DNA from: Octopus sinensis
Lineage: Eukaryota
NCBI RefSeq assembly: GCF_006345805.1
Contig: NC_043020.1
Location: 9,548,001 to 9,612,000 of the forward strand
Direction of reading: 5' to 3'
DNA: 64,000 bases
Every line of letters starts with the position of its first letter. The first letter of the stretch is position 1. The position numbers were made by a program, and so were the translations under genes. The notes under the pieces were generated by a model. It was not told the DNA's origin. It did not search any database and saw only the letters and a list, made by a program, of their open reading frames with translations. Positions 1,590 to 42,044 of this stretch are shown piece by piece.

Positions 1590-2240
1590 GGTGTTCTGGG
1601 TTCAGTCCCACTGCGTGGCACCTTGGGCAAGTGTCTTCTACTATAGCCTCGGGTCGACCAAAGCCTTGTGAGTGGATTTGGTAGACGGAAACTGAAAGAA
1701 GCCCATCATATATATATATAGGCATAGGAGTGGCTGTGTGGTAAGTAGCTTGTTTACCGACCACATGGTTCCGGGTTCAGTCCCACTGCGTGGCACCTTA
1801 GGCAAGTGTCTTCTACTATAGCCTCGGGTCGACCAAAGCCTTGTGAGTGGATTTGGTAGACGGAAACTGAAAGAAGCCCATCATATATATATATATAGGC
1901 ATAGGAGTGGCTGTGTGGTAAGTAGCTTGTTTACCGACCACATGGTTCCGGGTTCAGTCCCACTGCGTGGCACCTTAGGCAAGTGTCTTCTACTATAGCC
2001 TCGGGTCGACCAAAGCCTTGTGAGTGGATTTGGTAGACGGAAACTGAAAGAAGCCCATCATATATATATATATATAGGCATAGGAGTGGCTGTGTGGTAA
2101 GTAGCTTGTTTACCGACCACATGGTTCCGGGCTCAGTCCAACTGCGTGGCACCTTGAGCAAGTGTCTTCTACTATAGCCTCGGGTCGACCAAAGCCTTGT
2201 GAGTGGATTTGGTAGACGGAAACTGAAAGAAGCCCGTTGT
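1590..2240 (+). repeat. Tandem array (~3.7 x 177-179 bp) of the SINE-A 5' half
   Basis: Units restart at ggcatagg at 1721, 1898 and 2077. They share private variants (gggtcgacc, gtttaccgacc) and differ in (TA)n length. Confidence 0.9.
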
Positions 2241-2242
2241 AT

Positions 2243-2338
2243 GAGTGGTTTACCACAGGAATCACCGTAATATGGCTTCTATTCTGTATGGATACATTTA
2301 CGATGAGTTAAGTTTCTTCCAGGATAAAATGTTTCACA
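2243..2338 (-). pseudogene. Degenerate C2H2 zinc-finger relic
   Basis: The minus strand translates to CETFYPGRNLTHRKCIHTE*KPYYGDSCGKPL, a decayed finger plus TGEKPY-like linker and the start of the next finger. It is cut off by the SINE array. Confidence 0.6.
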
Positions 2339-2863
2339 ATAAACAACATTCGTGGCAGAAGTGAACCCACTGCTTAGAGATCTGAGAAGGAAAGGTGGTA
2401 ATTTTAATAGCAAATTGAAATGTAAAGTTTATTTATTGAGGTAAAAGTTTATTAGCGTATAATGTAAGAACCATTGTAAAATTTCTCTATTGGATATCTT
2501 TTTAATTATCTTTGATATCTTACACAATTTCTCTCTCATTTCAGATTACAAGATGGCATTGGCATTGAAGAATATTTTTGCATCAGATACATCACAGATA
2601 TTTATCACATTTTAAAGTGTACAGGAAAATATTCTACCTAAGAACTAAGAAGTAGTTCTTCTGAGTGAAACATTTCTCTCCTTCATTGCCTGGAATATGT
2701 ACAAGACGATTTTGTATACCAATTAACTGTTGAGACTTTTCCAAAGGGGGTTCGCAATCCTTTTCTGATAATGATAAAAGTTGATGGAAATATTACTGTT
2801 GAAATGTTTTGATCAACATAGGAATAAATAAAAAGAAAAGGAGAAAAATATCCATATATTATT

Positions 2864-4546
2864 GTGAGAAAAAATATATACAGAAGAGTTTTTTGTGTGA
2901 GAAATTTAAAAATGAGTGTTTTGTTTTTCCCTGAAGAATTGCCTAAGGAGATGGGAAAGCAATCCTACCACTGTGATACCTGCAAGAAGTCATTCTCTGA
3001 GGAAAGTAGCCTTGTTACTCATAAATGTATTCATACAAGAGAAAAGTCATTTGACTGTGACACCTGTGGTAAATTTTTCACCACAAAAAGTAACTTAACT
3101 ACTCACAAACGTGTTCATACAGGAAAGAAAAACTATCAATGTCATGTCTGTGGTAAATTTTTCTTTCAAGAAAGTGACTTAACTAAACACAAACACATCC
3201 ACACAAGAGGGAAGCCATATCGCTGTGATATCTGTGGTAAATCATTCTGTCGAATAGGTAGTCTATCTGTTCACAAACGTATTCATACAGGAGAGAAGCC
3301 ATATCAATGTGATATCTGTGGTAAAGCATTCTCTCGAACAGATGCTGTATCTGTTCACAAACGTATTCATACAGGAGAGAAGCCTTATCAGTGTGATATC
3401 TGTGGTAAATCGTTCACGGTAATGAGCCATGTAACTACTCACAGACGTATTCATACAGGAGAGAAACCTTATTGCTGTGATATTTGTGGCAAATCTTTCT
3501 CTGATGGAAATGCCTTAACTCGACACAAACGTATCCATACAGGAGAGAAACCATATCAGTGTGATATCTGTGGTAAATCATTCTCTCAAAATAGTGATGT
3601 AACTAAACACAGAAATATTCACACAGGAGAGAAACCATATCACTGTGATATCTGTGGTAAATCTTTCTCTGTATCTAGCAACTTAACTAATCACAATCGC
3701 ATTCATACAGAAGAGAAGCCCTATCACTGTGATATCTGTGGTAAATCATTGTGTGAGAACAGTGCTGTCACTAAGCACGAATGTGTTCACACAGGAGAGA
3801 AACCATATCACTGTGATATCTGTGGTGAGAACAGTGGTGTCACTAAGCACGAATGTGTTCACATTGGAGAGAAACCATATCACTGTGATATCTGTGGTAA
3901 ATCTTTCTCTCGAAAAGATAACTTAACTAGACACAAATATCTTCATACAGGTGAAAAAACACAGTGCTGTGAAATCTGTGGTAAATTTCTTGCTAGTGGA
4001 AGTTCTTTAGCTATACATAAATATGTCCATACTGGAGAAAAACTCTATCGATGTGATATCTGTGGTAAATCATTCTCTCAATGTAGTATCTTAATTGCTC
4101 ACAAACGTGTTCATACTGGAGAGAAACCATATCACTGTGACATCTGTGATAAATCATTCTCTGTGTGTAGTAATTTAATTCATCACAAACGGACTCACAC
4201 AGGAGAGAAGCCATTTCTCTGCGATGTCTGTGGTAAGTCATTCTCTCAAGGAAATGCCTTAAGTACTCACAAACATATTCATACAGGAGAGAAACCGTAT
4301 CACTGTGATATTTGTAGTAAGTCATTTGCTTGTAGAAATAGCTTAATTGTTCATGAGCGTATTCATACAGGGGAGAAGCCATATCGCTGTGATATTTGTG
4401 ACAAATCCTTCTCTGACAGAAATGCCTTTAATAGACACAAACGTGTACACACAGGAGAGAAACCGTATCGCTGTGATATTTGTGGTAAATCTTTCTCTCA
4501 AAGTGGTCAATTTACTAATCATAAACGAATTCATTCAGGAAAGTGA
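2864..4546 (+). CDS. Tandem C2H2 zinc-finger protein, 19 finger units (finger 11 has a 4-aa deletion); likely ATG at 2912 or 2951
   Basis: 560-aa ORF of C-X2-C-X12-H-X3-H repeats with TGEKPY linkers; no recognisable KRAB/SCAN/BTB domain. The ORF-track start is a GTG. A candidate splice acceptor (tttctctctcatttcag) ends at 2544. Confidence 0.93.
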
Positions 4547-4894
4547 CCATATCACTGTGGAATCTGCAGTAAATCAGTCTCTCGGATAAATATGTTATCT
4601 ACCCACAAATGTATCCCTACTGGAACCAAACCAAGTGACCGATTCGGTTGTTAAGCGTTCTTCCATAGAAGTAACGAACATGTGGGTTGTGGTAAATTCA
4701 TTGCTACATGTGTACTAATTACTTTTTTGTTGATTAAATTATTTTGTTTTTCTCATGGAAGTTCCCTGTAATATTTCTTAGAACATTGGACCAAAAAAAA
4801 ATTGTATGCAGCATTTGTTGTTCCAGCTCCCTATCTTCTGAGTTGAAACCCTTCAGATCTCACTTTTGCCTTTTATCCTTTTGCTATTCTTTCA

Positions 4895-5065
4895 TCTGCC
4901 GCTACGTTCTGAGTTCAAATTCCGCCGAGGTCGACTTTGCCTTTCATCCTTTCGGGGTCGATTAAATAAGTACCAGTGACGCACTGGGGTCGGTATAATC
5001 AACTTAATCCGTTTGTCTCCTCTGTGATTAGCCCCTTGTGGGTAATAAAGAAATAGGTATTCTTA
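4895..5065 (+). mobile_element. SINE family D (Meta-domain-like central box)
   Basis: Carries gcctttcatcctttcggggtcgattaaataagtaccag, which resembles the central box of Sauria/MetaSINEs. A fuller copy with a tRNA-like head is at 29716-29950+; others at 29950-30135, 31640-31825, 14480-14660-, 15640-15800-, 37040-37320-, 44610-45045-. Confidence 0.7.
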
Positions 5066-5329
5066 CAATAAAGCACAGATGAAGAACTGAGGTTAATGTA
5101 ATTGACAAACCACTTCTCAGAAAGTTGCTGGTCTTGTGCTTAAATTAGAATGATGTTTATTAATATTGATTCATTATCAATAAGTTTAGCCTTTAGGCTA
5201 AATATCAACCTTCAAAATATGAATATTAATTTATTTCTATGTAATGTGTAAAAACACTGTAAGTAATGATCTTTTTGATGTTATTAAATTTTGTTGATCA
5301 AATTTATTTTCCTCTTATTTCTAAGCCTT

Positions 5330-5966
5330 TGACAGAATCCCTGCTCCCTTATCTGGTGGTGAATGTAGAAGCTAGGGATAGATGAGTGGTTGGTTAGAGT
5401 TATATAAGCCATGTACAGGGATGCTGTCAGTAAGGTGGTGGGTGGCATACAGGTTGGAGTCCACCAAGGATCAGTTCTCAGTCCCCTCTTGTTTATCATA
5501 TCCTCCAGGCCATAACATAGGAATTTAAGGCTGGTGGCCCTTGAGAGCTCTTCTACACTAATGACCTTGTTCTTATAGCTGAATCCCTACCTGAACAAGA
5601 GAGGAAATTTCAGGTTTGGAAACAAGGTCTAAGGGCCTTAGAGTTGATTTAGCAAAGTTCAAAGTCTTAGTAAGTAGGAAAACTGACAAATCCTTTCTAG
5701 GTGGTGGCCTTGCTTCACATGTAGGTAAAAATGTTGGGAGAAACTTCATATGGTGTACCCGTGCAAGAGTTGCAATGGTATCATGGGAAGGATAACAGAG
5801 AAAGTAGTCTTTGTGCATGACAGATGTGTGGGTACAATAAACACTAAGAATGCACAGAGGATAGACATCCTGAAATGTCCGGGGGATATCCTTAGAAGTA
5901 GTAGACAGCTTCTGTTATCTAGGTGACCAAGTTAGCAGTGGGGGAGGTAGTTCCCAAAATGTAGTT
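5330..5966 (+). mobile_element. Decayed non-LTR reverse-transcriptase fragment (RTE/RTE-X-like)
   Basis: Frameshifted translation QVGVHQGSVLSPLLFII..LQAIT*EFKAGGP*ELFYTNDLVLIAE (YADD-like) and LEVVDSFCYLGDQV. A partial mirrored copy lies at 14930-15370. Confidence 0.8.
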
Positions 5967-7439
5967 ACTCTTTTACTTGTTTCAGTCATTTGACTGCGGC
6001 CATGCTGGAGCACTGCCTTTAGTCGAGCAAATCGACCCCGGGATTTATTCTTTGTAAGCCCAGTACTTATTCTATCGGTCACTTTTGCCGAACTGCTAAG
6101 TGACGGGAGACGTAAACACACACCAGCATCGGTTGTCAAGCAATGCTAGGGGGACAAACACAGACACACAAACACACACACACACATATATATATATACA
6201 TATATACGACAGGCTTCTTTCAGTTTCCGTCTACCAAATCCACTCACAAGGCATTGGTCGGCCCGGGGGCTATAGCAGAAGACACTTGCCCAAGATGCCA
6301 CGCAGTGGGATTGAACCCAGAACCATGTGGTTGATTAGCAAGCTACTTACCACACAGCCACTCCTGCGCCTATGTTGTTATGATAAACACAAGTTGGGCA
6401 AAAGTTCAGAGAGTTATCACCTTTGTTGAGTGAAGGAAGGGAGTGAATAAAGAATAATAGTGGATGAGAATGTTGCCTATCTGTCTGACTGACCCTTATT
6501 CTGTCCGTCTGCCTTTGTAACACATTCTCTTTCCCTCTGTCTCTCTCTCTCTCTCTCCTCTCTCAGGAAATTATTTTGAATGCATTAAGGAGACAGCTCA
6601 TAAGCGTTCAAAATAATTTTCCCATCGTCTTGGCTTAACAGACCTCATCGCAGGAGTGGCTGTGTGGTAAGTAGCTTGCTTATGAACTACACGGTTCCGG
6701 GGTTCAGTCCCACTGCGTGGCATCTTGGGCAAATGTCTTCTACTATAGCCTCGGGCCGACCGAAGCCTTGTGAGTGGATTTGGTAGACGGAAACTGAAAG
6801 AAGCCTGTCGTATGTATGTATATATATGTATATATATGTATGTGTGTGTGTTTGTGTGTCTGTGTTTGTCCCCCTAGCATTGCTTGACAACCGATGCTGG
6901 TGTGTTTACGTCCCCGTCACTTAGTGGTTCGGCAAAAAGAGACCGATAGAATAAGTACTGGGCTTACAAAAAGAATAAGTCCCGGGGTCGATTTGCTCGA
7001 CTAAAGGCGGTGCTCCAGCATGGCCGCAGTCAAATGACTGAAACAAGTAAAAGTAAAGTAAAGTAAGTTTGTTTTTACTGTGTTATTCTCTTTATCCTGT
7101 CTTTTACTGTTTTTAAAAAATAAATAAATAAATAAAATAAAATAAAATAATAAAAATATATATATTTGAAATTTATAAGTTTAAATTATTTAAATAATTT
7201 TTTAAATTTTAACTTTAATTTAAATATTTTAATTCGGAATTTTATATTTTTTATATTTATATCTTATATTTTTTAATTAATTTTATTTCTATGTATTGGC
7301 TTATGATTTTCACTGTTTGATTTGCCTAATAGTGGTTTTATCTCTAATTTAATATAATATATATATATATTTATAGTCCAACCCATGCTAGCATGGAAAG
7401 CGGACGCTAAACGATGATGATATATATATGTATATATAT

Positions 7440-7493
<54 letters not shown>

Positions 7494-8506
7494 CTCATTT
7501 ATACCTGCAATATATGGCTAATATAGGTTAATGAGACATACCTATCTGCATGGCCGAAACAGCTGTCAGTTATAATGTATATGTATTTTTATATCTTGTT
7601 ATATTTATTTAGTTATACCTCATTATATTGATTGTCATTATTGTACTGTATTAATGTCTAATCTTAATGCTCTTGTGTAGTGTTTTAATAAAGTATATGA
7701 TTCGGTATTATCTGATAGTTGATGAATGATTTAGATATATTTCTCCATTTTCTTATTTTGTATATGTATATATACATATATATATATATGTATATATACA
7801 TATCGAGTTCTTTGAATGTTGGCCCTCATAAAGGCAAAGTGGTTGAGTTCCTTTTAGAAGACCTATAAAGCTGAGCAAAATCACAGTTGTGTAAGATGCT
7901 GGTGTGACACAAATGGTACATGTGCTGGTGGCACATGAAAGCTCTTATTGCACTTTTGGAGTGGTTGGCATTAGGAAGGGTGTCCAGCTGTAGAAACCAT
8001 GTCAAATCAGACTTGCATCTGGTGTAGCCTTCCAAGCATGCCGGCCCTGGTCAAACCGTCCAAACCATGCTATCATGGACAACAGATGTTTAATGCTGAT
8101 GATGATGATACACACACACACACACATATATATATCTATATCTACTCTTTTACTCTTTTACTTGTTTCAGTCATTTGACTGCGGTCATGCTGCAGCAGCG
8201 CCTTTAGTCGAGCATATCGACCCCAGGACTTATTCTTTGTAAGCCCAGTACTTATTCTATCGGTCTATTTTGCCGAACTGCTAAGTGACGGGGACGTAAA
8301 CACACCAGCATCGGTTGTCAAGCAATGCTAGGGGGACAAACACAGACACACATACATATAGCAATGCTAGAGGGACAAACACAGACACACAAACATATAC
8401 ACACATACATATAGCAATGCTAGAGGGACAAACACAGACACACAAACATATACACACACATACATATAGCAATGCTAGAGGGACAAACACAGACACACAA
8501 ACATAT

Positions 8507-8556
<50 letters not shown>

Positions 8557-8719
8557 CAAGGTTCTTTCAGTTTCCGTCTACCAAATCCACTCACAAGGCT
8601 TTGGTTGGCCTGAGGTTACAGCAGAAGATACTTGCCCAAGATGCTATGCAGTTGGACTGGACCCGGAACCATGTGGTTGGTTAGCAAGCTACTTACCGCA
8701 CAGCCATCTATATATATAT

Positions 8720-9058
8720 ATAAATTAAATTGGAGATAAAACCACTATTAGGCAAATCTATTAGGGTTTATCTCTAATTTAATTTATATTTATACTGTGA
8801 AATTTGATTTAATCCTAAATCTAATTTTTCCCTGTAAGTTTGGATTTACTCCCTAATATTATTATTATGACCGCGTGTGTACCGTTGGCGTTTTTTTTTC
8901 CTCTGTCTTCCCTTCTCTGGATCTTTCCTTCTCCTATGTTTCTGACGAAGAGCTCAGCTCGAAACGTTAAACCCTCCTTCTTTCCTGAGCATCCAATAAT
9001 ACTATATTTGTTCCACATCCTCGCGTTGTTGTGTTTTTTTGTGCTTTCTCGTTTGGAT

Positions 9059-9065
<7 letters not shown>
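8720..9065 (+). mobile_element. Penelope-like pLTR-type fragment
   Basis: Contains the ctgacgaag...cgaaacgtt hammerhead-type motif. Its upstream part recurs at 63300-63560 and 7310-7350. Confidence 0.55.
8938..8972 (+). ncRNA. Minimal type I hammerhead ribozyme motif
   Basis: GTTT-CTGACGA-A-GAGC-TCA-GCTC-GAA-ACGT-T-AAAC: 4-bp stem I, intact core with an extra nt after A9, 4-bp stem II, palindromic stem III ACGT, and a GUU site. Confidence 0.65.
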
Positions 9066-9106
<41 letters not shown>

Positions 9107-9444
9107 AATACACATATATAATAAAGGAATTACCATATTTTCCTGTGTATAAGCTGCTATATTTTACCTGGGAGATTAAGTGTGTGGTTTATAGAAAGGT
9201 GTGCCTAATGTGTGTATCTTTTATAAGTTTCAGGAGGAAAATAATTTGTGTAGGGACATCAACTGATTTTTTTTTATAGACGAAAGGTCACTTGGCAAAC
9301 AGCGTGAAAGACTACTACTATAGTACATTGGTACCTGGAAGAAAATAGCATATTTGTTTTGTTTTTACCTTCATGTTTTGATAATGTTATTTTTAATCCA
9401 ATAAAGACTTTAATATTGACAAAATGTGTTTGTTGTTGATTACA

Positions 9445-10047
9445 TCATCATCATCATCATCGTTTAATGTCCGCTTTCCATGCTAGCATGGGTTGGACGG
9501 TTCAACTGGGGTCTGGGGAGCCCGAAGGCTGCACCAGGCCAGTCAGATCTGGCAGTGTTTCTACAGCTGGATGCCCTTCCTAATGCCAACCACTCCGAGA
9601 GTGTAGTGGGTGATTTTATGTGCCACCGACACAGGTGCCAGACGAGGCTGGCGAACGGCCACGCTCGGATGGTGTTTTTTATGTGCCACCGACACAGGTG
9701 CCAGACGAGGCTGGCAGACGGCCACGCTCGGATAGTGTTTTTTATGTGCCACCGACACAGGTGCCAGACGAGGCTGGCAGACGGCCACGCTCGGATGGTG
9801 TTTTTTATGTGCCACCGACACAGGTGCCAGACGAGGCTGGCGAACGACCACGCTCGGATGGTGTTTTTTATGTGCCACCGACACAGGTGCCAGATGAGGC
9901 TGGCGAACGGCCACGATCGGATGGTGTTTGTTACATGCTCACAGCACGGAGGCCAGTCGATGCGGTACTGGCTACGGCCACGTTCGGATGGTCTTCTTAT
10001 GTGCCACCGGCACTGGTACCACAAAGATACAAATTCCATTGATGTTC
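9445..10047 (-). mobile_element. Non-autonomous RTE-type retroposon family B with internal ~62-bp tandem units and (gat)n tail
   Basis: Tail ...ggacattaaacgatgatgatg; core gagtggttggcattaggaagggcatccagctgtagaaac; five ~62-bp internal units; flanked by a 50-bp direct repeat. Other copies: 20700-21215+, 23975-24245-, 30420-30800-, 32065-32710-, 33640-34180-, 34710-34960-, 47680-47985-, 53230-53600-, 59320-59810-, 60780-61180-. Confidence 0.8.
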
Positions 10048-10430
10048 AATCCAATAAAGACTTTAATATTGACAAAATGTGTTTGTTGTTGATTACAGTA
10101 AGATAAAATCATAACAATACATCTCATAGTTGTAAAATAGGGCATTTTGAAACTACATACACGACAACAAAAAAGTTAGCTGCGGACCCTTTTAAACGCT
10201 GGTGTGATTTATACTCTTTACTCTCTCTCTGTTACTTGTTTCAATCATTTGACTGCAGCCATGCTGGAGCACCACCTTTAGTCAAGCAAATCGTCCCCAG
10301 GTCTTATTCTTTGTAAGCCTAGTGCTTATTCTATCAGTCGCTTTTGCCGAACCTGTAAGTTACATGGATGTAAACACACCAGTATCGGTTGTCAAGCGAT
10401 GTTGGGATGGGGACAAACACAGGCGCACGC

Positions 10431-10473
<43 letters not shown>

Positions 10474-12374
10474 ATATGTGTGTGTGTGTGTTGTGTCTGT
10501 GTTTGTCCCCATCCCAACATCGCTTGGCAACCGATACTGGTGTGTTTACATCCATGTAACTTACGACGAGCTTCTTTCAGTTTCCGTCTACCAAATCCAC
10601 TCACAAGGCTTTGGTCAGCCCGAGGCTATAGTAGAAGACACTTGCCCAAGGTGCCACGTAATGGGACTGAACCCGGAACCATGTGGTTGGTAAGCAAGCT
10701 ACTTATGACACAGCCACTCCTGCACCTATATGTGTGGGTAAAATCAACATTTTCCCCCAAATTCAGCCCTGCGGCTTAAATACTGATGCATGTTATAGAC
10801 TGGAAAATACAGTATATGTAATGACCATTATTGTAACATATATATACATATATATTGACCCGGCAACGCCAGGTCATAATGCTAGTGCATGCATATACAG
10901 CTGCGTGCCTGCACACATACACGCGAATACTGTCCAAATCTCCAACCAATCACATACAGCTAGCTGGCATTCAATTGGCGTATCAAGTTTCGGGCATTTT
11001 GATTGGGTTTTGAATAGAAAATTCACAAAAAAGTCACTTCTATTGATTTTTTTTAATGGATTAGCGGGGTGACGGGGGAAATGTAAAGATGTGCATGACC
11101 ACCCTTGGACGGTTTTGAATGACCATAGATAGTGCAAGCCCTCTAACTGAAAAATTGTGAATTTGTATAAAGGACACACAGACAGACATTTTGCCGTTTA
11201 TATACTCTTTTACTCGTTTCAGTCATTTGACTGCGGCCATGCTGGAGCACCGCCCCCGAGACTTATTCTTTGTAAGCCTAGTACTTATTCTATCGGTCTC
11301 GGGGACGTAAACACACCAGCATTGGTTGTCAAGCAATGCTAGGGGGACAAACACAGACACACATATATATATACATATATACGACAGGCTTCTTTCAGTT
11401 TCCGTCTACCAAATCCACTCACAAGGCATTGGTCGGCCCGGGGCTATAGCAGAAGACACTTGCCCAAGATGCCACGCAGTGGGACTGAACCCGGAACCAT
11501 GTGGTTGGTTAGCAAGCTACTTACAACAAAGCCACTCCTGCGCCTATATATAAAGATATATAATAATAATAATGATAATTTAAGTAATCAGAAGATGGCA
11601 TTGGTATTAATCTTTATTTTGAAAAACAGTAATTTCGATCCATCCTGTTCCTTATGGGTAAGACTCCATTCAACATGTTGTGTTGCATCCATTTTGCAGT
11701 CTGGGTCTCATCAGGGACATCCATAAATAAACTTGTGTCTTGCTAAAGATCCTGAGTTTTGGTTGTCATGTTATATGTCGTCTGGTTAGGGAATGAAACA
11801 TTGCTACAATTTTCAATTGCTATTATCTTTAAGAATTGCAAGCATTTGTAAATATAGGCGCAGGAGTGGCTGTGTGGTAAGTAGCTTGCTAACCAACCAC
11901 ATGATTCCGGGTTCAGTCCCACTGCGTGGCATCTTGGGCAAGTGCCTTCTGCTATAGCCCCGGGCCGACCAATGCCTTGTGAGTGGATTTGGTAGACGGA
12001 AATTGAAAGAAGCCTGTCGTATATATGTATATATATATATAAGTGTGTGTGTCTGTGTTTGTCCCCCTAGCATTGCTTGACAACCGATGCTGGTGTGTTT
12101 ACGTTCCCGTCACTTAGCGGTTCGGCAAAAGAGACCGATAGGATAAGTACTGGGCTTACAAAGAATAAGTCCCGGGGTCGATTTGCTCGACTAAAGGCGG
12201 TGCTCCAGCATGGCCGCAGTCAAATGACTGAAACAAGTAAAAGATTATAGAAATTAAAACATTTCTAAATCTCTGAGAGAGATTTATGCAATGGCAGCAC
12301 GATAAAGTGATAGTAAGTTGTCAACTTAATGTGACAGTCCCATGAAAGGGAAGAATGCTACTGTTATTTAGCCC

Positions 12375-12421
12375 TAGGAAACACCGTTTCGTGTTGGACT
12401 TGACACATCTTCTGTGTCCTT
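12375..12421 (-). ncRNA. Degenerate second hammerhead motif in tandem with 12468-12510
   Basis: Minus strand: AGGACA-CAGAAGA-T-GTGT-CAAGTCCA-ACAC-GAA-ACGGT-G-TTTCCT. The core U4 and the cleavage site are mutated. Confidence 0.45.
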
Positions 12422-12467
12422 ATGTTTTCAAAGGGGAGATAAGCACCTCTACCCAGCAAAGCCAGAA

Positions 12468-12510
12468 TCCAGAGACTAGTTTCAGAGTCATTGCTCATCA
12501 TCAGTCTGGA
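12468..12510 (-). ncRNA. Minimal hammerhead ribozyme motif (one extra nt before GAAA)
   Basis: Minus strand: TCCAGA-CTGATGA-T-GAG-CAATGA-CTC-T-GAA-ACTAGT-C-TCTGGA. It has a perfect 6-bp stem I, palindromic stem III ACTAGT and a GUC site. Confidence 0.65.
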
Positions 12511-13110
12511 GTAGCATGGCTTTGTAAACATAGACAAATAACTCTTTTTGTTTGTTTCAGCCATTTGGCTGCAGCCATGCTGGAGCACTTCCTTTAGTCG
12601 AACAAATCGATCTCAGGATTCATTCTTTGTAAAGACTAGTACTTATTTTATCGGTCTCTTTTGCCGAACTGCTAGGTTACGGAGACGTAAACACACCAGC
12701 ATCAGTTGTCAAGCGATGGTAAGGGAACAAACACAGAAATTCAAACATACACAAACACATATATATATACGACAGGCTTCTTTCAGTTTCCGTTTACCAA
12801 ATCCGCTTACAAGGCTTTGGTAGGAGCGAGGTTATACTAGAAGACACTTGCCCAAGGTGCCACGTGGTGGGACTGAATCTGGAACCATGTGGTTCGTAAG
12901 CAAGCTACTTACCACACAGCCACTCCTGCACCTAGTTAGGTGCAATTTTGGAATGAAATTTGGTTCTTATTTCAGTGACTATACAGTTTCCACCCGTGAC
13001 ATAGTGTTGCTGTTTTGTTCTCAGGTTAGCCATGGCTGGAAGTCGTTTTCATTGATGCTATTAGTTTTATAAAAGATCAAACAAAAAGAAACATTATGGA
13101 CAAAAAAAAA

Positions 13111-13306
13111 GTGGCTGTGTGGTAAGTAGCTTGCTAACCAACCACATGGTTCCGGGTTCAGTCCCACTGCGTGGCATCTTGGGCAAGTGTCTTCTGCTAT
13201 AGCCCGAGGCTATAGCAGAAGTCACTTGCCCAAGGTGCCACGTGGTAGGACTGAATCTGGAACCATTTGGTTGGTAAGCAAGCTACTTATCACAAAGCCA
13301 CTCCTG
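13111..13306. repeat. Head-to-head SINE-A fold-back (~94-bp arms)
   Basis: A plus-strand head is joined to a minus-strand head through ctatagcc-cga-ggctatag. Confidence 0.85.
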
Positions 13307-14004
13307 CTGATAAAAAAAAATTTGTGGGGGAAGTGAATGGATGGTTGGGCAGGGATGTGTAGTGGTGTAGGTAGCTAAATATTTGCATGATCTCCCTTGC
13401 AAGAAATATACTGGAGTAATCACCCTTTGGTAAGTTTCTCGAAGCATATGATATTTTAATTATTCAAGCTTAGCATTTCTCTTGGAAGTTTCTAGAATGT
13501 CAAGTGTTCCATTAACAAAAACAGCTAGGCACAGGAGTGGCTTTGTGGTAAGTAGCTTGCTTACCAACCACATGGTTCCGGGTTCAGTCCCACTGCGTGG
13601 CACCTTGGGCAAGTGTCTACTGCTATAGCCCCGGGCCGACCAAAGCCTTGTGAGTGGATTCGGTAAACGGAAACTGAAAGAAGCCCGTCGTATACATCTA
13701 TATATATGTATGTGCGTGTATGTTTGTGTGTGTCTGTGTTTGTCCCTCTAGCATTGCTTGACAACCGATGCCGGTGTGTTTACGTCCCCGTTGCTTAGCG
13801 GTTCGGCAAAAGACACCGATAGAATAAGTACTGGGCTTACAAAAGAATAAATCCCGGGGTCGATTTGCTCGACTAAAGGCGGTGCTCCAGCATGGCCGCA
13901 GTTAAATGACTGAAACAAGTAAAAGAGTAAAAGAGAGAGTAACCCAGCTTTTCACTCCTTAGTCGATTAGACATAAGAGCCATCGACGTCATTGCTATAT
14001 GGTG

Positions 14005-14385
14005 GAAGCACTCCGTCGGTTACGACGATGAGGGTTCCGGTTGATCCGATCAACGGAACAGCCTGCTCGTGAAATTAAAGTGTAAGTGGCTGAGCACTCC
14101 ACAGACACGTGTACCCTTAACGTAGTTCTCGGGGATATTCAGCGTGACAGAGAGATTGACAAGGCCGGCCCTTTGAAATACAGGTACAACAGAAACAAGA
14201 AGTAAGAGTGAGAGAAAGTTGTGGTGAAAGGGTACAGCAGGGATCACCACCATCCCCTGCCGGAGCCTCGTGGAGCTTTAGGTGTTTTCGCTCAATAAAC
14301 ACTCACAACACCCAGTCTGGGAATCGAAACCGCCATCCTATGACTGCGAGTCCGCTGCCCTAACCACTGGGCCATTGCGCCTCCA
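14005..14385 (-). mobile_element. tRNA-derived SINE family C
   Basis: Head ggaggcgcaatggcccagtggttagggcagcggactcgcag...ggtttcgattccc has A/B boxes; the 3' end forms a strong hairpin. Other copies at 43935-44310- and 52701-53076+. Confidence 0.85.
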
Positions 14386-14418
14386 CGTACATATTCACAC
14401 AAGGGATGTTGGCCCACA

Positions 14419-14897
14419 TGGTTTGTCAATTACATTAACCTCAGTTCTTCGTCTGTGCTTTATGGTAAGAATACCTATTTCCTTATTACCCACAGGGGGC
14501 TAATCACAGAGGAGACAAACAAGGACAGACAAACGGATTAAGTTGATTATACCGACCCCAGTGCGTCACTGGTACTTATTTAATCGACCCCGAAAGGATG
14601 AAAGGCAAAGTCGACCTCGGTGGAATTTGAACTCAGAACGTAGCGGCAGATGAAAGAATACCAAAAGGATAAAAGGCAAAAGTGAGATCTGAAGGGTTTC
14701 AACTCAGAAGATAGGGAGCTGGAACAACAAATGCTGCATACAATTTTTTTTTTGGTCCAATGTTCTAAGAAATATTACAGGGAACTTCCATGAGAAAAAG
14801 AAAATAATTTAATCAACAAAAAAGTAATTAGTACACATGTAGCAATGAATTTACCACAACCCACATGTTCGTTACTTCTATGGAAGAACGCTTAACA
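14419..14897 (-). repeat. Third, more diverged copy of the ZNF 3' flank (duplicates 15582-16046)
   Basis: Direct repeat of 15582-16046 with about 7 substitutions and a retained 14-bp segment (aaggacagacaaac) that both arms lack. Confidence 0.9.
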
Positions 14898-14929
14898 CCA
14901 ACCACTCATCTATCCCTAGCTGCTACATT

Positions 14930-17900
14930 CACGGGTACACCATATGAAGTTTCTCCCAACATTTTTACCTACATGTGAAGCAAGGCCACCACCTAGAAAG
15001 GATTTGTCAGTTTTCCTACTTACTAAGACTTTGAACTTTGCTAAATCAACTCTAAGGCCCTTAGACCTTGTTTCCAAACCTGAAATTTCCTCTCTTGTTC
15101 CGGTAGGGATTCAGCTATAAGAACAAGGTCATTAGTGTAGAAGAGCTCTCAAGGGCCACCAGCCTTAAATTCCTATGTTATGGCCTGGAGGATATGATAA
15201 ACAAGAGGGGACTGAGAACTGATCCTTGGTGGACTCCAACCTGTATGCCACCCACCACCTTACTGACAGCATCCCTGTACATGGCTTATATAACTCTAAC
15301 CAACCACTCATCTATCCCTAGCTTCTACATTCACCACCAGATAAGGGAGCAGGGATTCTGTCAAAGGCTTAGAAATAAGAGGAAAATAAATTTGATCAAC
15401 AAAATTTAATAACATCAAAAAGATCCTTACTTACAGTGTTTTTACACATTACATAGAAATAAATTAATATTCATATTTTGAAGGTTGATATTTAGCCTAA
15501 AGGCTAAACTTATTGATAATGAATCAATATTAATAAACATCATTTCTAATTTAAGCACAAGACCAGCAACTTTCTGAGAAGTGGTTTGTCAATTACATTA
15601 ACCTCAGTTCTTCATCTGTGCTTTATTGTAAGAATACCTATTTCTTTATTACCCATAAGGGGCTAATCACAGAGGAGACAAACGGATTAAGTTGATTATA
15701 CCGACCCCAGTGCGTCACTGGTACTTATTTAATCGACCCCCGAAAGGATGAAAGGCAAAGTCGACCTCGGCGGAATTTGAACTCAGAACGTAGCGGCAGA
15801 TGAAAGAATAGCAAAAGGATAAAAGGCAAAAGTGAGATCTGAAGGGTTTCAACTCAGAAGATAGGGAGCTGGAACAACAAATGCTGCATACAATTTTTTT
15901 TTTGGTCCAATGTTCTAAGAAATATTACAGGGAACTTCCATGAGAAAAACAAAATAATTTAATCAACAAAAAAGTAATTAGTACACATGTAGCAATGAAT
16001 TTACCACAACCCACATGTTCGTTACTTCTATGGAAGAACGCTTAACAACCGAATCCGTCACTTGGTTTGGTTCCAGTAGGGATACATTTGTGGGTAGAAA
16101 ACATATTTATCCGAGAGACTGATTTACTGCAGATTCCACAGTGATATGGTCACTTTCCTGAATGAATTCGTTTATGATTAGTAAATTGACCACTTTGAGA
16201 GAAAGATTTACCACAAATATCACAGCGATACGGTTTCTCTCCTGTATGTACACGTTTGTGTCTATTAAAGGCATTTCTGTCAGAGAAGGATTTGTCACAA
16301 ATATCACAGCGATATGGCTTCTCCCCTGTATGAATACGCTCATGAACAATTAAGCTATTTCTACAAGCAAATGACTTACTACAAATATCACAGTGATACG
16401 GTTTCTCTCCTGTATGAATATGTTTGTGCGTACTTAAGGCATTTCCTTGAGAGAATGACTTACCACAGACATCGCAGAGAAATGGCTTCTCTCCTGTGTG
16501 AGTCCGTTTGTGATGAATTAAATTACTACACACAGAGAATGATTTATCACAGATGTCACAGTGATATGGTTTCTCTCCAGTATGAACACGTTTGTGAGCA
16601 ATTAAGATACTACATTGAGAGAATGATTTACCACAGATATCACATCGATAGAGTTTTTCTCCAGTATGGACATATTTATGTATAGCTAAAGAACTTCCAC
16701 TAGCAAGAAATTTACCACAGATTTCACAGCACTGTGTTTTTTCGCCTGTATGAAGATATTTGTGTCTAGTTAAGCTATTTACTTGAGAAAATGTGTTACC
16801 ACAGATATCACATTGATATGGTTTCTCTCCAGTATGAACACGTTTGTGAGTAGTTAAGATACTACATTGAGAAAATGATTTACCACAGATATCACAGAAA
16901 TGTGCTCTTTCTCCTGTATGAATATATTTGTGTCTAGTTAAGTTAGCTTTTCCAGATAATGATTTACCACAGATATCAGAGTGATAGGGCTTCTCTTGTG
17001 TATGAATGCGTTTGTGATCAGTTAAGTTACTAGATACAGTGAAAGATTTGCCACAAATATCACAGCAATAAGGTTTCTCTCCTGTATGAATACGTCTGTG
17101 AGTAGTTACATGGCTCATTACCGTGAACGATTTACCACAGATATCACACTGATAAGGCTTCTCTCCTGTATGAATACGTTTGTGAACAGATACAGCATCT
17201 GTTCGAGAGAATGCTTTACCACAGATATCACATTGATATGGCTTCTCTCCTGTATGAATACGTTTGTGAACAGATACGTCATCTGTTCGAGAGAATGATT
17301 TACCACAGATATCACACTGATAAGGCTTCTCTCCTGTATGAATACGTTTGTGAACAGATACAGCATCTGTTCGAGAGAATGCTTTACCACAGATATCACA
17401 TTGATATGGCTTCTCTCCTGTATGAATACGTTTGTGAACAGATACGTCATCTCTTCGAGAGAATGATTTACCACAGATATCACAGTGATATGGCTTCTCT
17501 CCTGTGTGAATACGTCTGTGCTTAGTTAAGTCACTTGTTTGAAAGAATAATTTACCACAGATATCACAGTGATATGGCTTTTTTCCTGTATGAAGGCGTT
17601 TGTGAGTAGTTAAGTTACTTTTTGTGGTGAAAAATTTACCACAGATGTCACATTCAAATGACTTTTCTCTTGTATGAATACATTTATGAGTAACAAGGCT
17701 ACTTTCCTCAGAGAATGACTTCTTGCAGGTATCACAGTGGTAGGATTGCTTTCCCATCTTAGGCAATTCTTCAGGGAAAAACAAAACACTCATTTTTAAA
17801 TTTCTCACACAAAAAACTCTTCTGTATATATTTTTTTTCACAATAATATATGGATATTTTTCCCCTTTTCTTTTTATTTATTCCTATGTTGATCAAAACA

Positions 17901-18294
17901 TTTCAACAGTAATATTTCCATCAACTTTTATATCATTATCAGAAAAGGATTGCGAACCCCCTTTGGAAATGTCTCAACAGTTAATTGGTATACAAAATCG
18001 TCTTGTACATATTCCAGGCAATGAAGGAGAGAAATGTTTCACTCAGAAGAACTACTTCTTAGTTCTTAGGTAGAATATTTTCCTGTACACTTTAAAATGT
18101 GATAAATATCTGTGATGTATCTGATGCAAAAATATTCTTTAATGCCAATGCCATCTTGGAATCTGAAATGAGAGAGAAATTGTGTAAGATATCAAAGATA
18201 ATTGAAAAGATATCCAACAGAGAAATTTTACAATGGTTCTTACATTATACGCTAATAAACTTTTACCTCAACAAATAAAGTTTACATTTTAATT
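14930..18294 (-). repeat. Right arm of inverted segmental duplication (partner 2413-5763)
   Basis: Reverse complement of the left arm, including the RT fragment, SINE-D, ZNF CDS and upstream acceptor (AG at 18163-18164). Confidence 0.95.
16150..17841 (-). CDS. Tandem C2H2 zinc-finger protein, 19 finger units (finger 10 has C->S); likely ATG at 17793 or 17757
   Basis: 563-aa ORF, paralog of 2864-4546. Finger 1 and fingers 13-19 are identical; the middle fingers differ. Confidence 0.93.
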
Positions 18295-18379
18295 AGTCAC
18301 TAAAATTACACCATATAAAATTTACATATTTACACACTACAGATACGTCTTCAGATTGTGTAACATCACTTATATTACA

Positions 18380-19950: not shown

Positions 19951-21600
19951 GTAAACATTGTAAAAAAAAAAAGTGTTTTATCATATATGATAATAAAAAC
20001 ATTTTCATTAAATTATAGGGATCTTTTCGGTTTGAACGGCAGATTTTTTAAAAATAATTTCTATGTGGCATCTTGGGCAAGTGTCTTCTGCTATAGCCCC
20101 GGGCCGACAAATGCCTTGTGAGTGGACTTGGTAGACGGAAACTGAAAGAAGCCTGTCGTATATATGTTTATATATATAAGTGTGTGTGTGTGTATGTGTG
20201 TGTGTGTCTGTGTTTGTCCCCCTAGCATTGCTTGACAACCGATGCTGGTGTGTTTACGTCCCCGTCACCTAGCGGTTCGGCAAAAAGAGACCGATAGAAT
20301 AAGTACTGGGCTTACAAAGAATAAGTCCCGGGGTCGATTTGCTCGACAAAAGGCGGTGCTCCAGCATGGCCGTAGTCAGATGACTGAAACAAGTAAAAGA
20401 TTAAAAGAAAGATATGTAACTGAACACTTTTAAACTTCGTATACTGGTAGTGTGTGTTTATAAAACATCTTTTTCTCTTGGCTTTCTTGAGAAAATTCTG
20501 TAGTTTGTAACATATTTGTTGTTTAATTTCTTGCATTTCGGCAATTTCAACCAATCAATGACGTCTATTGAGATGAAAACGATTTCTGTCGTAACATTTT
20601 GTGGCGGCGTCATATGAAAATGTCCCTGTTACATATTATGTATTCGTTTAAGAAACAGATTGGGTTTATTTACATTTCTGAAGAAAAAAAATACCCTTCC
20701 CGCCACCCCTAACCCTAAAAAAAGCACCATCCGTTCGTGGCCATTGCCAGCCTCGCCTGGCCCCCGTGCCGGTGGCACGTAAAAACACCATCCATTCGTG
20801 TCCGTTGCCAGCCTCGCCTGGCCTCCGTGCCGGTGGCACGTAAAAGCACCATCCATTCGTGGCCGTTTGCCAGCCTTGACTGGCCCCCGTGCCAGTGGCA
20901 CGTAAAAAGCACCATATGCTCGAGTCCGTTGCCAGCCTCGCCTGGCCCCCGTGCGGTGGCACGTAAAAAGCACCATCCGTTCGTGGCCGTTTGCCAGCTC
21001 CGTCTGGCACCTGTGCGGGTGGCACGTAAAAAGCACCCACTACACTCACGGAGTGGTTGGCGTTAGGAAGAGCATCCAGCCGTAGAGACACTGCCAGATC
21101 AGACTGGAGCCTGGTGCAGCCTTTCTGGCTTCACAGACCCCAGTTGAACCGTCCAACCCATGCCAGCATGGAAAGCGGACGCTAAACGAAGATGATGATG
21201 ATGATGATGATGATGATGAGGAGGAGGAGGGGGAGGAGGAAGGCTGATAATGATGATGGTGACAACGATGGTGTTGGTGACAATGATGATGATGATGATG
21301 GCATTGATTTATAAACACACACACACACACACTTGTATACACATGTGGTTTTAATCACTATTGACTGTATCTCTGGTAATACCATCGTGTATAGATATCA
21401 TACACACATGATTCTATAATTCAATCACTACTGTGTATATCACTGTCTGATGACACCAATGACTACACATATCATACACACATGCTTCCATCACCAAGTT
21501 TGTGTCTCTCTCTGATGACACCAATGTCTACAGATGTAATACACACATGATCTTTATTACTACTATTGCTTATACCTCTGTCAGTATACCTCTTACTCTT

Positions 21601-25047: not shown

Positions 25048-25107
<60 letters not shown>

Positions 25108-26045
25108 ATAGAGAGTAAGAGAGAGAAGAATAGAGAGTAAGAGAGAGAGAGACGATTAGAGAGAAAGGGAGAGAGAGATACGGAGAGAGAGAGAGACGAT
25201 TAGAGAGAAAGAGAGAGAAGAATAGAGAGAAAGGGGGAGAGAGAGATAAGGATAGAGAGAGATATACGGATATATATATATATAAGGATAGAGAGAGAGA
25301 GATAAGGATAGAGAGAGAGAGAGAGACGATTAGAGAGAAAGAGAGAGAGACGATTAGAGAGAAAGAGAGAGAAGAATAGAGAGAAAGGGAGAGAGAGATA
25401 TAAGGATAGAGAGATATATACGGATAGAGAGAAAGAGAGAGAGATATATAAGGATAGAGAGAGAGATATGGATAGAGAAATAAGGATAGAGAGAGAGAGA
25501 GATACGGATAGAGAGAAAGAGAGAGAAGGATAGAGAGAAAGAGATAGAGAGAAAGAGAGAGAGAGAAGGATAGAGAGAAGGATAGAGAGAAAGATAGAGA
25601 GAGAAGGATAGAGAGAAAGAGATAGAGAGAAATAGAGAGAGAGAAGGATAGAGAGAGTAAAGAATAGAGAGAAAGAGATAGAGAGAAGGATAGAGAGAAA
25701 TAGAGAGAGAGAAGGATAGAGAGAGAGAGATATGGATAGAGAAATAAGGATAGAGAGAGAGAGATACGGATAGAGAGAAAGAGAGAGAGAAGGATAGAGA
25801 GAAAGAAATAGAGAGAAAGAGAGAGAGAAGGATAGAGAGAAGGATAGAGAGAAAGATATAGAGAGAAGGATAGAGAGAAGAGGTAGAGAGAAATAGAGAG
25901 AGAGAAGGATAGAGAGAGTAAAGAATAGAGAGAAAGAGATAGAGAGAAGGATAGAGAGAAATAGAGAGAGAGAAGGATAGGGAGAGAGAAGAATAGAGAA
26001 AGAGAGAGAGAAGGAGAGAGAGAGAGAGAAGGAGAGAGAGAGAGA
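25045..26045 (+). repeat. ~1-kb compound (GA)n-rich polypurine satellite
   Basis: Units such as gagagagaaggata and gagagaaagagata, almost free of pyrimidines apart from spaced T. It generates the spurious SLSL ORFs. Confidence 0.95.
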
Positions 26046-41745: not shown

Positions 41746-41787
41746 TAAGATGATTTTTAATGAAATTAATTAAAATCTAAAAAATTA

Positions 41788-42003
41788 ACGAGGGGGTGCT
41801 GAAAAGTTCCTGGTTTTGGGTAAAAGAAAATACAGGAGGATCAGTTAATTAGGATTTTATTCAACATATTTCCCTTTCAGATCCACACACTTATTGCAAA
41901 TGTCCTTCAATTTTTCTAAGCCCTGTGAAAAAACTCAGAATGTTGGGCATCCATCTGGGCCCGAACCCTAACTTTTAAAACCAGGAACATTTCAGCATGC
42001 CCT

Positions 42004-42006: not shown

Positions 42007-42044
<38 letters not shown>

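What the first reader, a model, noticed from the sequence alone, without database searches (positions are those of the whole stretch)
2413..18294. Palindromic pair of 19-finger ZNF genes whose middle DNA-reading fingers were swapped as modules
Seen: two convergent paralogs sit in 3.35-kb inverted arms. Finger 1 and fingers 13-19 are protein-identical; I found 3 synonymous and 0 non-synonymous differences from finger 13 to the stop. Fingers 2-4 differ at many residues (finger-4 helix RIGSL vs RRDDV). Left fingers 7-12 (DGNA, QNSD, VSSN, ENSA, ENSG, RKDN) are replaced by right fingers 9-12 (VSSN, GKAN, QCSI, QVNS). The right copy has duplicated its finger 4-5 pair (168-bp period). Both genes still total 19 units, each with one broken finger. 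Inference: the arms are kept alike by conversion or recent duplication while a finger cassette is exchanged with other cluster members. This would give a constant scaffold with a variable recognition cassette in a KRAB-less ZNF family.
Basis: partly seen in the sequence, partly recalled or inferred. Interest (0 to 1): 0.8.

Follow-up and report, generated by a model that had tools for sequence, protein, structure and literature searches.

The report
Inverted pair of octopus zinc-finger genes
Two mirror-image copies of a 19-finger DNA-binding gene, probably in an octopus genome, are almost identical except in their middle fingers, which were reshuffled by finger duplication, deletion and short copy-paste patches; this is real, but it is the ordinary way such genes evolve.

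Summary
Two convergent ORFs (2864-4546 +, 16150-17841 -) lie in 3.37-kb inverted arms (2396-5763 and 18311-14930) around a 9.2-kb SINE-filled spacer. Each encodes 19 C2H2 finger units, 18 intact and one broken, and nothing else.

Divergence along the arms is strongly mosaic (scan statistic P<5e-5). It is 0.4-1.3% in the flanks, finger 1 and fingers 13-19, and 0/236 in an island covering fingers 4-7. It reaches 8-24% in three patches. Synonymous divergence in the patches is about 0.16, against 0.017 in fingers 13-19, so point mutation after a recent duplication cannot explain them.

"Modules swapped with other cluster members" is only partly supported:
- Several differences are in-register events within the array: a 168-bp duplication in the right copy, a 168-bp deletion that left a hybrid finger, a 72-bp duplication in the left copy, and a finger-5-like helix written into right finger 4.
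- Right finger 11 is 95% identical to finger 14.
- Fingers 2, 3 and 9 keep their DNA-contact residues almost unchanged.
- The window holds no other ZNF gene, and no outside relative could be retrieved, so outside donors remain untested.

Best reading: an inverted duplicate pair homogenised by gene conversion, whose out-of-register middle escapes. It is a new member of a known kind; interest is modest.

The parts
2396..5763 (+). Left arm of the inverted duplication: 5' flank, ZNF ORF and 1.2-kb 3' flank
   Evidence: The outer edge 2396-2435 is 22% diverged; the inner boundary at 5763 is sharp.
14930..18311 (-). Right arm, the reverse complement of the left arm
   Evidence: BLAST gives 94.65% over 3385 columns, indels included.
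2864..4546 (+). Left poly-C2H2 ORF, 560 aa from the GTG; likely start ATG 2912 or 2951. 19 finger units
16150..17841 (-). Right poly-C2H2 ORF, 563 aa; likely start ATG 17793 or 17757. 19 finger units
5764..14929 (.). 9.2-kb spacer between the arms, largely ~400-bp SINE-like copies and simple repeats
3112..3263 (+). Divergent patch 1 (finger 2 tail, finger 3, finger 4 helix); right counterpart 17596-17447. 13.8% mismatches
   Evidence: The best shifted match inside the window is 85%, so no in-window donor was found.
3264..3499 (+). Perfectly identical island (finger 4 tail to finger 7 codon 8), 0/236 mismatches; right counterpart 17276-17041
17149..17484 (-). Right-copy-specific tandem duplication of the finger 4-5 pair (2 x 168 bp; R04-R05 and R06-R07), 1 nt difference
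3500..3667 (+). 168 bp present only in the left copy (L07 codon 9 to L09 codon 8). The right copy has hybrid finger R09 at the junction
   Evidence: Segment B has 0 mismatches through L07 codon 8.
3728..3883 (+). Left-specific fingers L10 and L11. L11 (3812-3883) is a 72-bp copy of L10 lacking 4 codons, the broken finger
   Evidence: 96% identity; TRF period 72 at 3753-3898.
16813..16980 (-). Right-specific fingers R10 and R11. R10 is broken (first Cys->Ser) and finger-12-like at 87%. R11 is finger-14-like at 95%
3884..3921 (+). Divergent head and helix of finger 12 (9 mismatches in 38 bp); right counterpart 16812-16775. Identity resumes from codon 14
4547..4633 (+). Decayed 20th finger after the shared in-linker stop codon (HSGK*PYHCGICSKS...HKCIP); right counterpart 16149-16063
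14419..14897 (-). Third copy of the arm 3'-flank segment 4649-5112, 32 bp from the inner end of the right arm. 8 substitutions (~2%) plus a 14-bp indel against both arms
2222..2335 (-). Decayed ZNF relic of about 1.5 fingers with a stop codon, just outside the left arm

Best explanation
This is a genuine inverted segmental duplication of an effector-less poly-C2H2 zinc-finger gene, in what is most likely an octopod genome.

Proposed mechanism (inferred). The duplication is older than the roughly 0.4% arm divergence suggests. Recurrent arm-to-arm gene conversion, as in chromosome palindromes, keeps three stretches nearly identical: the 5' flank with fingers 1-2, a short island over fingers 4-7, and everything from mid-finger 12 through 1.8 kb of 3' sequence. 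The middle of the array escapes. In-register unequal exchange or slippage between the 84-bp finger units has put the two copies out of register there: +168 bp in R, -168 bp in R, and +72 bp in L. Short templated patches that use other fingers as donors have also rewritten helices.

Outcome. Two paralogous DNA-binding proteins share fingers 1-3, 5, 6 and 13-19 in their contact residues. They differ at finger 4 and in the central block.

Shown: the anatomy, the mosaic divergence, the finger events, and the excess synonymous divergence in the patches. Inferred: the age of the duplication, conversion as the homogeniser, and DNA binding as the function.
For: - Mosaic divergence with sharp boundaries. 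The scan statistic gives P<5e-5.
- Patch pS is 0.163, against 0.017 in fingers 13-19 and 0 in fingers 5-6. The patches therefore have a much older coalescence than the flanks.
- There is a divergence gradient at the outer edge: 22% over 2396-2435, about 2.5% over the next 160 bp, then about 1%. The 'homogenised' background is also uneven: 1.33% in the 5' part against 0.43% in the 3' part, Fisher P=0.024. Repeated conversion predicts this; a single recent duplication does not.
- A third copy of the 3' flank, abutting the right arm, is about 2% diverged from both arms, while the arms differ by 0.4% in the same stretch.
- Intragenic events are directly visible:
  - R04-05/R06-07 duplication with 1 nt difference.
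  - R09 is the L07 head (24/24 identical after a 168-bp perfect run) joined to the L09 helix and tail.
  - L11 is a 72-bp copy of L10.
  - R04/R06 is the L04 backbone (33/33 in the tail) with a finger-5-like helix (21-22/24); all 7 differences from L04 lie within 16 bp.
  - R11 is 95% identical to finger 14.
- All coding indels are multiples of 3, and both ORFs are intact.
- Only C2H2-type (zinc-finger) families are real matches in Pfam.
- TE ORFs in the window hit Octopus sinensis and O. vulgaris best among named proteins.
- Finger gain and loss plus short conversions are the known mode of divergence for recent poly-ZF paralogs (PMC2604467). Conversion-maintained inverted gene pairs are also known (PMC1803023; PMC3723533).
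Against: - There is no outgroup. No orthologue or other family member could be retrieved, so the age of the duplication and the direction of each change are inferred from two sequences only.
- Patch divergence (14-24%) is far above the ~2% of the third flank copy. Simple 'unconverted old divergence' does not fit unless the third copy is itself partly converted or is younger.
- The 236-bp island of perfect identity between the two patches needs its own short conversion tract.
- Patch 1, L07-L08 and L10 have no in-window template above about 88%. Import from an outside paralogue would explain them in one or two events.
- The outer-edge gradient rests on a short AT-rich stretch.
- Expression and DNA binding are untested.
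Confidence: 0.45

Rival explanations
1. The inverted duplication is recent (about 0.4%). The middle of one copy was then overwritten by one or two ectopic gene-conversion tracts from another member of the same ZNF family outside the window, giving a constant scaffold with an exchanged finger cassette.
For: - A single tract from about 3112 to 3921 could account for patch 1, the indels and patch 2 at once.
- The patches differ at synonymous sites (pS 0.16), as imported paralogous sequence would.
- Fingers 2, 3 and 9 in the patches are positional homologues with the same contact residues, as expected of a donor from the same family.
- Patch 1, L07-L08 and L10 have no good in-window template.
- Short conversions among ZNF paralogues are documented (PMC2604467).
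Against: - The 64-kb window contains no donor; there is only a decayed relic.
- No family member was found in any searchable collection, so this is untested rather than refuted.
- Several differences are demonstrably intragenic and of different ages: R duplication 0.6%, L10/L11 4%, R11/F14 5%. A single import does not fit that spread.
- The uneven background and the edge gradient fit repeated arm-to-arm conversion better.
Confidence: 0.3
2. Assembly artefact: two alleles or haplotigs of one gene wrongly placed as an inverted duplication, or a fold-back chimera.
For: The background arm divergence (0.4%) is in the range of allelic variation. Repeat-rich ZNF loci are hard to assemble.
Against: - Homology ends sharply at both ends of the arms, and the sequence beyond is unrelated (about 50% identity). 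Alleles would share their flanks.
- The 9.2-kb spacer is unique in arrangement. Fold-back artefacts have little or no spacer.
- The copies differ by several structured in-frame events of different ages.
Confidence: 0.05
3. A recent duplicate pair whose middle fingers diverged in place by point mutation under positive selection on the recognition helices.
For: The differences at finger 4 and finger 12 are concentrated in the helix. Positive selection on contact residues is known in expanding ZNF families (PMC2604467, PMC10547256).
Against: - Synonymous divergence in the patches is about 10-fold above background, and pN/pS is 0.59, not above 1.
- Fingers 2-3 differ in backbone and linkers while their contact residues are unchanged.
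- Seven changes within 16 bp, next to 236 bp with none, is not a point-mutation pattern.
Confidence: 0.03
4. The inverted repeat acts mainly as a hairpin-RNA (endo-siRNA) locus. Read-through across the convergent arms would give a long double-stranded RNA that targets the ZNF family.
For: The arms are 3.4 kb, convergent and 95-100% complementary. Hairpin-RNA loci in other animals arise from inverted gene duplicates (own knowledge).
Against: - Both arms keep intact 560-aa ORFs, and every coding indel is in frame.
- The 9.2-kb repeat-filled spacer makes a single hairpin transcript less likely.
- There are no RNA data.
Confidence: 0.03

Closest known systems
Lineage-specific poly-C2H2 zinc-finger paralogues that diverge by whole-finger gain and loss and short gene conversions (Emerson & Thomas 2009, PMC2604467; vertebrate KZFP clusters)
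   Same: The copies are recently related and differ mainly by duplication, deletion or inactivation of whole fingers and by short converted stretches. Helix residues change while the C2H2 backbone and TGEKP linkers stay the same.
   Different: There is no KRAB, SCAN or BTB domain. The host is a mollusc (an octopod). The two copies are an inverted pair with near-identical non-coding flanks, not tandem neighbours.
Cephalopod or octopus C2H2 ZNF expansions (Albertin 2015, cited from memory; Holzinger 2025 PMC12513265; Jiang 2022 PMC9795677; Wells 2023 PMC10547256)
   Same: An effector-less multi-finger gene in a SINE-rich octopod-like genome. These families are reported to expand by local duplication and are predicted to bind TEs.
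   Different: Of these papers, the three checked by term search (Albertin 2015 could not be fetched) describe copy number, expression and clusters; none mentions gene conversion, and the two searched for 'inverted' do not mention it. Membership of a specific expansion clade was not tested.
Palindromes and inverted gene pairs maintained by arm-to-arm gene conversion (human Y and X palindromes, PMC3723533, PMC8327919; C. elegans inverted paralogue pairs, PMC1803023)
   Same: Inverted arms with a unique spacer. Arm identity is 99% or more over most of the length, non-coding sequence included, and each arm carries a gene.
   Different: The arms are small (3.4 kb). An internal block of about 0.8 kb is strongly divergent and structurally rearranged. 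Conversion is inferred, not shown by a cross-species comparison.
PRDM9-type minisatellite zinc-finger arrays
   Same: Finger number and order change through in-register unequal exchange between 84-bp units.
   Different: Finger units here average 71-73% DNA identity, against more than 90% in PRDM9 arrays. There is no PR/SET or KRAB domain.

Membership tests
Krueppel-type poly-C2H2 zinc-finger proteins | Tandem C-X2-C-X12-H-X3-H units at 28-aa spacing | tested here: met
   18 intact units per ORF at 28-aa spacing.
Krueppel-type poly-C2H2 zinc-finger proteins | TGEKP-like linkers and Pfam zf-C2H2 / zf-H2C2_2 above the curated cut-off | tested here: met
   zf-H2C2_2 scores 430 and 468 bits (cut-off 40); zf-C2H2 scores 273 and 287 bits (cut-off 25.2). 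The linkers are visible.
KRAB-ZFP (or SCAN-, BTB-, FiNZ-ZNF) | An N-terminal effector domain | tested here: not met
   Only C2H2-type (zinc-finger) families are real Pfam matches in either ORF. In-frame stops lie just upstream of 2864, and the leader is at most 36 aa. An unrecognised upstream exon cannot be excluded without RNA data.
Octopod/coleoid C2H2 ZNF expansion | The host genome is a coleoid cephalopod | tested here: inconclusive
   TE ORFs have their best named hits in Octopus sinensis (73%) and O. vulgaris (77%). The SINE sequence is recognised from memory only. No exact protein from the window is in the collection.
Octopod/coleoid C2H2 ZNF expansion | Phylogenetic placement inside a cephalopod-specific ZNF clade | not testable with these tools
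   Searches rank long vertebrate poly-ZNFs first. No hit exceeds 56% identity. The leader search found no candidate.
Conversion-maintained palindrome / inverted gene pair | Inverted arms separated by a unique spacer, with 99% or more identity that includes non-coding sequence | tested here: met
   The 3' 1.8 kb is 99.6% identical and the 5' 0.7 kb 98.7% identical. The spacer is 9.2 kb. The middle ~0.8 kb is the exception.
Conversion-maintained palindrome / inverted gene pair | Arms more alike within a species than orthologous arms are between species (concerted evolution) | not testable with these tools
   No orthologous locus is available. The indirect hints are the edge gradient, the uneven background and the ~2% third copy.
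PRDM9-like minisatellite ZNF array | Near-identical finger repeat units (over 90% DNA identity) and a PR/SET domain | tested here: not met
   Mean unit identity is 71-73%. Only the recent duplicates reach 90% or more. There is no SET domain.
   In-window templates exist for R06-07, L11, R11 and the R04/R06 helix. None exists for patch 1, L07-08 or L10. The genome outside the window could not be searched.

The most novel reading that the evidence does not exclude
The pair could be one visible instance of a family-wide process in octopod ZNF genes. In that process a conserved scaffold (5' flank, terminal fingers, 3' flank) would be held constant by concerted evolution. Central recognition fingers would be repeatedly exchanged among dispersed paralogues by short-tract conversion, giving a modular, cassette-like route to new DNA specificities in a KRAB-less family.
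Probability: 0.07. Interest if true: 0.7.

Novelty: new member of a known kind. Interest (0 to 1): 0.3.

Why it matters
Cephalopod C2H2 expansions have so far been described by copy number, clustering and expression. This locus gives a base-level example of how two such copies come to read different DNA:
- in-register finger duplication and deletion;
- a hybrid finger;
- helix-sized templated patches;
- all set in flanks that are kept almost identical.

It is a clean test locus for measuring gene conversion and finger turnover in an invertebrate ZNF family. It also offers a natural pair for asking which fingers set target choice, because the two proteins share 12 fingers and differ in the rest. 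It does not reveal a new mechanism. The same processes are well documented for vertebrate poly-ZF genes and for palindromes.

Tried and rejected
1. Searching for relatives or donors.
- The full-length protein search and the exhaustive representative search returned only long poly-ZNFs from vertebrates and other animals at 56% identity or less. Summed multi-finger scores bury any short close relative.
- Exact look-ups of six start variants of the two ORFs and of ten other window ORFs found nothing.
- A query with only the non-finger leader peptide found no candidate (after a length error).
- A 29-mer from finger 1 is absent from metagenome contigs.

2. Rfam and ARAGORN found nothing in the window.

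3. In-window donors for patch 1. The best register-shifted match is 85%, so no donor was found.

4. Transposon-borne gene. I saw no target-site duplication at the arm ends (manual reading, not run as a test). The arms carry no transposase, and the spacer has no long ORF apart from repeat artefacts. Rejected.

5. In-situ positive selection. Rejected, because pS is raised 10-fold in the patches and pN/pS is 0.59.

6. PRDM9-like minisatellite behaviour. Rejected, because finger units are only about 72% alike.

7. The Albertin 2015 paper could not be fetched. Statements about it rest on memory and on papers that cite it.

Full report
**Anatomy**

The window holds exactly two poly-zinc-finger genes. 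A six-frame scan finds 18 canonical C-X2-C-X12-H-X3-H fingers in frame at 2972-4534 (+) and 18 at 17736-16162 (-). It finds nothing comparable elsewhere. The ORFs are 2864-4546 (+, 560 aa) and 16150-17841 (-, 563 aa).

The genes are convergent and sit in inverted arms at 2396-5763 and 18311-14930, separated by 9.2 kb. Parsing gives 19 finger units per gene. Each gene has one broken unit:
- L11 has lost four codons.
- R10 has Ser in place of the first Cys.

Pfam finds only C2H2-type (zinc-finger) families as real matches in either ORF. In-frame stops lie just upstream of the ORFs. The coding exon therefore encodes a short leader plus fingers, with likely starts at ATG 2912 or 2951 on the left and 17793 or 17757 on the right. 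Both genes end at a stop codon created inside a linker (HSGK*PY). A decayed 20th finger follows it.

Every helix string, the 168-bp duplication in the right copy, the identical finger 1 and fingers 13-19, and the unit counts are confirmed.

Three refinements are needed:
- Counting from the first Cys of finger 13, there are two synonymous differences (4267, 4450). The third (3952) is in the preceding linker. None is non-synonymous.
- In fingers 2 and 3 the contact residues (-1, 2, 3, 6) are identical in both copies (TSNT, QSDK). The substitutions lie in the beta-hairpin and linkers, where the left copy is non-canonical: [20 protein letters not shown].
- The right 'VSSN' finger is a hybrid, described below.

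**Mosaic divergence**

I built a piecewise alignment guided by the finger-by-finger DNA identity matrix. It gives 61 mismatches in 3044 collinear columns, distributed very unevenly.

| Stretch | Coordinates (left arm) | Mismatches |
|---|---|---|
| Outer edge | 2396-2435 | 22% |
| 5' flank to mid-finger 2 | 2436-3111 | 1.33% |
| Patch 1 | 3112-3263 | 13.8% |
| Identical island | 3264-3499 | 0/236 |
| Finger 9 tail | 3668-3727 | 8.3% |
| Finger 12 head and helix | 3884-3921 | 23.7% |
| Rest of the coding region | 3922-4546 | 0.48% |
| 3' flank (1.2 kb) | 4547-5763 | 0.41% |

The densest 150-bp stretch holds 20 mismatches. The maximum in 20,000 random placements was 15.

**Point mutation cannot explain the patches**

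In the collinear diverged fingers (2, 3, 4, 9, 12), pS is 0.163 and pN is 0.096, a ratio of 0.59. Fingers 13-19 have pS 0.017 and pN 0. Fingers 5 and 6 have no differences at all.

The patches therefore carry roughly ten-fold more silent divergence than their surroundings. They have a different and older history, either retained or imported. They are not recent adaptive substitutions.

**What the finger-level comparison shows**

- (a) R04-R05 and R06-R07 are a 168-bp tandem duplication differing by 1 nt.
- (b) Identity is perfect from finger 5 through codon 8 of L07/R09. R09 then continues as the helix and tail of L09. The right copy therefore lacks exactly 168 bp (3500-3667), and R09 is an L07/L09 hybrid. 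This is the footprint of in-register unequal exchange.
- (c) L11 is a 72-bp copy of L10 (96% identical; TRF period 72).
- (d) L04 and R04/R06 are identical except for 7 changes within 16 bp of the helix. In that stretch R04/R06 match finger 5 at 21-22 of 24 positions. This looks like a helix-sized templated patch on an unchanged backbone.
- (e) R11 is 95% identical to finger 14.
- (f) The R10 helix matches the L12 helix (22/24) better than R12 does (19/24). The R12 tail equals the L12 tail (32/33). One way to derive R10-R11 is a duplication of fingers 12-13-14 followed by loss of the extra finger 13.
- (g) L07 and L08 carry the same contact residues as fingers 18 and 3 (DNAR, QSDK), but at only 85-88% DNA identity.

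The equal total of 19 units is therefore simple arithmetic. The right copy has +2 and -2 fingers, and each copy has two private fingers.

No in-window template above about 88% exists for patch 1, L07-L08 or L10.

**Context**

Two LINE-derived ORFs in the window find their best named matches in Octopus sinensis (73%) and Octopus vulgaris (77%). A ~400-bp SINE-like element occurs more than 30 times in the 64 kb and fills most of the spacer. I recognise its sequence as the common octopus SINE, but only from memory. The host is therefore most likely an octopod.

None of the window's ORFs is in the protein collection. No ZNF relative above 56% identity could be retrieved.

Two further features of the locus:
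- A decayed, oppositely oriented ZNF relic lies 60 bp outside the left arm, at 2222-2335.
- A third copy of the 3'-flank segment 4649-5112 lies 32 bp from the inner end of the right arm, at 14419-14897. It differs from both arms by 8 substitutions (~2%) and a 14-bp indel. The arms differ from each other at one substitution and two 1-bp indels in the same stretch.

**Interpretation**

Sharp-edged mosaicism with excess silent divergence is a gene-conversion or recombination signature. Two histories fit it.

*History A, which I favour (about 0.45).* The inverted duplication is older. The arms are homogenised by repeated arm-to-arm conversion, as in sex-chromosome palindromes and C. elegans inverted gene pairs. 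The central array escapes because finger indels have thrown it out of register. The evidence for A:
- the divergence gradient at the outer edge;
- the significantly uneven background (1.33% against 0.43%, P=0.024);
- arms that are more alike than the adjacent third flank copy is to either of them;
- intragenic events of clearly different ages (0.6%, 4%, 5%).

The evidence for B:
- it is economical;
- the patches have no in-window donor;
- patch divergence is much higher than the ~2% of the third copy.

Only the rest of the genome, or a sister species, can decide between A and B.

An assembly artefact is unlikely. Homology stops abruptly at both arm ends with unrelated sequence beyond, and the spacer is long and unique.

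**Function (inferred)**

The two genes most likely encode sequence-specific DNA-binding proteins without a recognised effector domain. They share the contact residues of fingers 1-3, 5, 6 and 13-19. They differ at finger 4 and in the central block.

Octopus ZNFs have been predicted to bind TE sequences preferentially (PMC10547256). They are reported to be expressed in neural and embryonic tissue (PMC12513265; PMC12988792). Nothing in the window tests this for the present pair.

**Comparison with what is known, and novelty**

Whole-finger gain and loss and short conversions are the documented way in which recently duplicated poly-ZF paralogues diverge (PMC2604467). Conversion-maintained inverted gene pairs are also known. 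The locus is not KRAB-type and not PRDM9-like: finger units are only about 72% identical and there is no SET domain.

The three cephalopod ZNF papers I searched by term do not mention gene conversion, and the two searched for 'inverted' do not mention it either. The example is therefore new for the clade, but it is a new member of a known kind. I score interest at 0.3.

The more exciting reading is a family-wide scaffold-plus-cassette exchange system. The evidence does not exclude it, but two copies give it no positive support (probability about 0.07).

Noticed in passing
window 5965-6376, 6649-7066, 7902-8413, 8468-8868, 10205-10733, 11197-11580, 11843-12263, 12541-12937, 13525-13942 and more than 20 other sites: A ~400-bp SINE-like element with a tRNA-like end and an internal (AC)n/(AT)n microsatellite occurs more than 30 times in the 64 kb. 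It makes up most of the palindrome spacer. ARAGORN and Rfam do not call it.
   Followed up: partly
window 1593-2235: A 177-bp tandem array (3.6 copies, 97% matches) built from the tRNA-like end of the SINE, immediately left of the left arm.
   Followed up: no
window 4547-4633 and 16063-16149: Both genes stop at a codon inside a linker (HSGK*PY). A decayed 20th finger follows (last His replaced by Pro). The ancestral gene was therefore at least one finger longer, and the truncation predates the last homogenisation of the arms.
   Followed up: partly
window 2222-2335 (-): A decayed ZNF relic of about 1.5 fingers with an internal stop, in the opposite orientation, 60 bp outside the left arm. It is the remnant of a further family member.
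   Followed up: partly
window 14419-14897 (-): A third copy of the arm 3'-flank segment 4649-5112, 32 bp from the inner end of the right arm. It is ~2% diverged and has a 14-bp insertion. It ends where a tRNA-like element begins. The palindrome's inner breakpoint coincides with this junction, which hints at one complex rearrangement.
   Followed up: partly
window 4890-5060; 29767-30135; 31642-31826; 37034-37218; 44927-45002: A ~185-bp dispersed repeat (80-85% identity between copies). It is present inside both arms' 3' flanks and occurs as a tandem dimer at 29764-30135.
   Followed up: no
window 57097-59161; 55881-56482; 25051-26046: A 105-bp satellite (19.7 copies, 96% matches), a 22-bp minisatellite (28 copies), and about 1 kb of degenerate (GA)n that causes the extreme GC and AT skew at 24-26 kb.
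   Followed up: no
window 9614-10021; 20719-21037; 33808-34088; 59488-59652: A repeated element carrying a 61-63-bp minisatellite (TTTTATGTGCCACCGACACAGGTGCCAGACGAGGCTGG...). It produces spurious 130-200-aa ORFs on both strands.
   Followed up: no
window 41216-43411 (-); 54019-54486 (-): LINE debris. There is a jockey/CR1-like reverse-transcriptase C-terminus followed by a fragment with a lone C2H2-like finger (CPHCDRSFRARIGLISHLRTH at 42776). There is also an RTE/BovB-like C-terminus. The best named matches are Octopus sinensis and O. vulgaris proteins at 73-77%.
   Followed up: partly
window 2946-2948: A 3-bp (GAG, Glu) indel between the two candidate start codons. It is in frame with the ORF, which mildly favours translation from the upstream ATG (2912 / 17793).
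   Followed up: no
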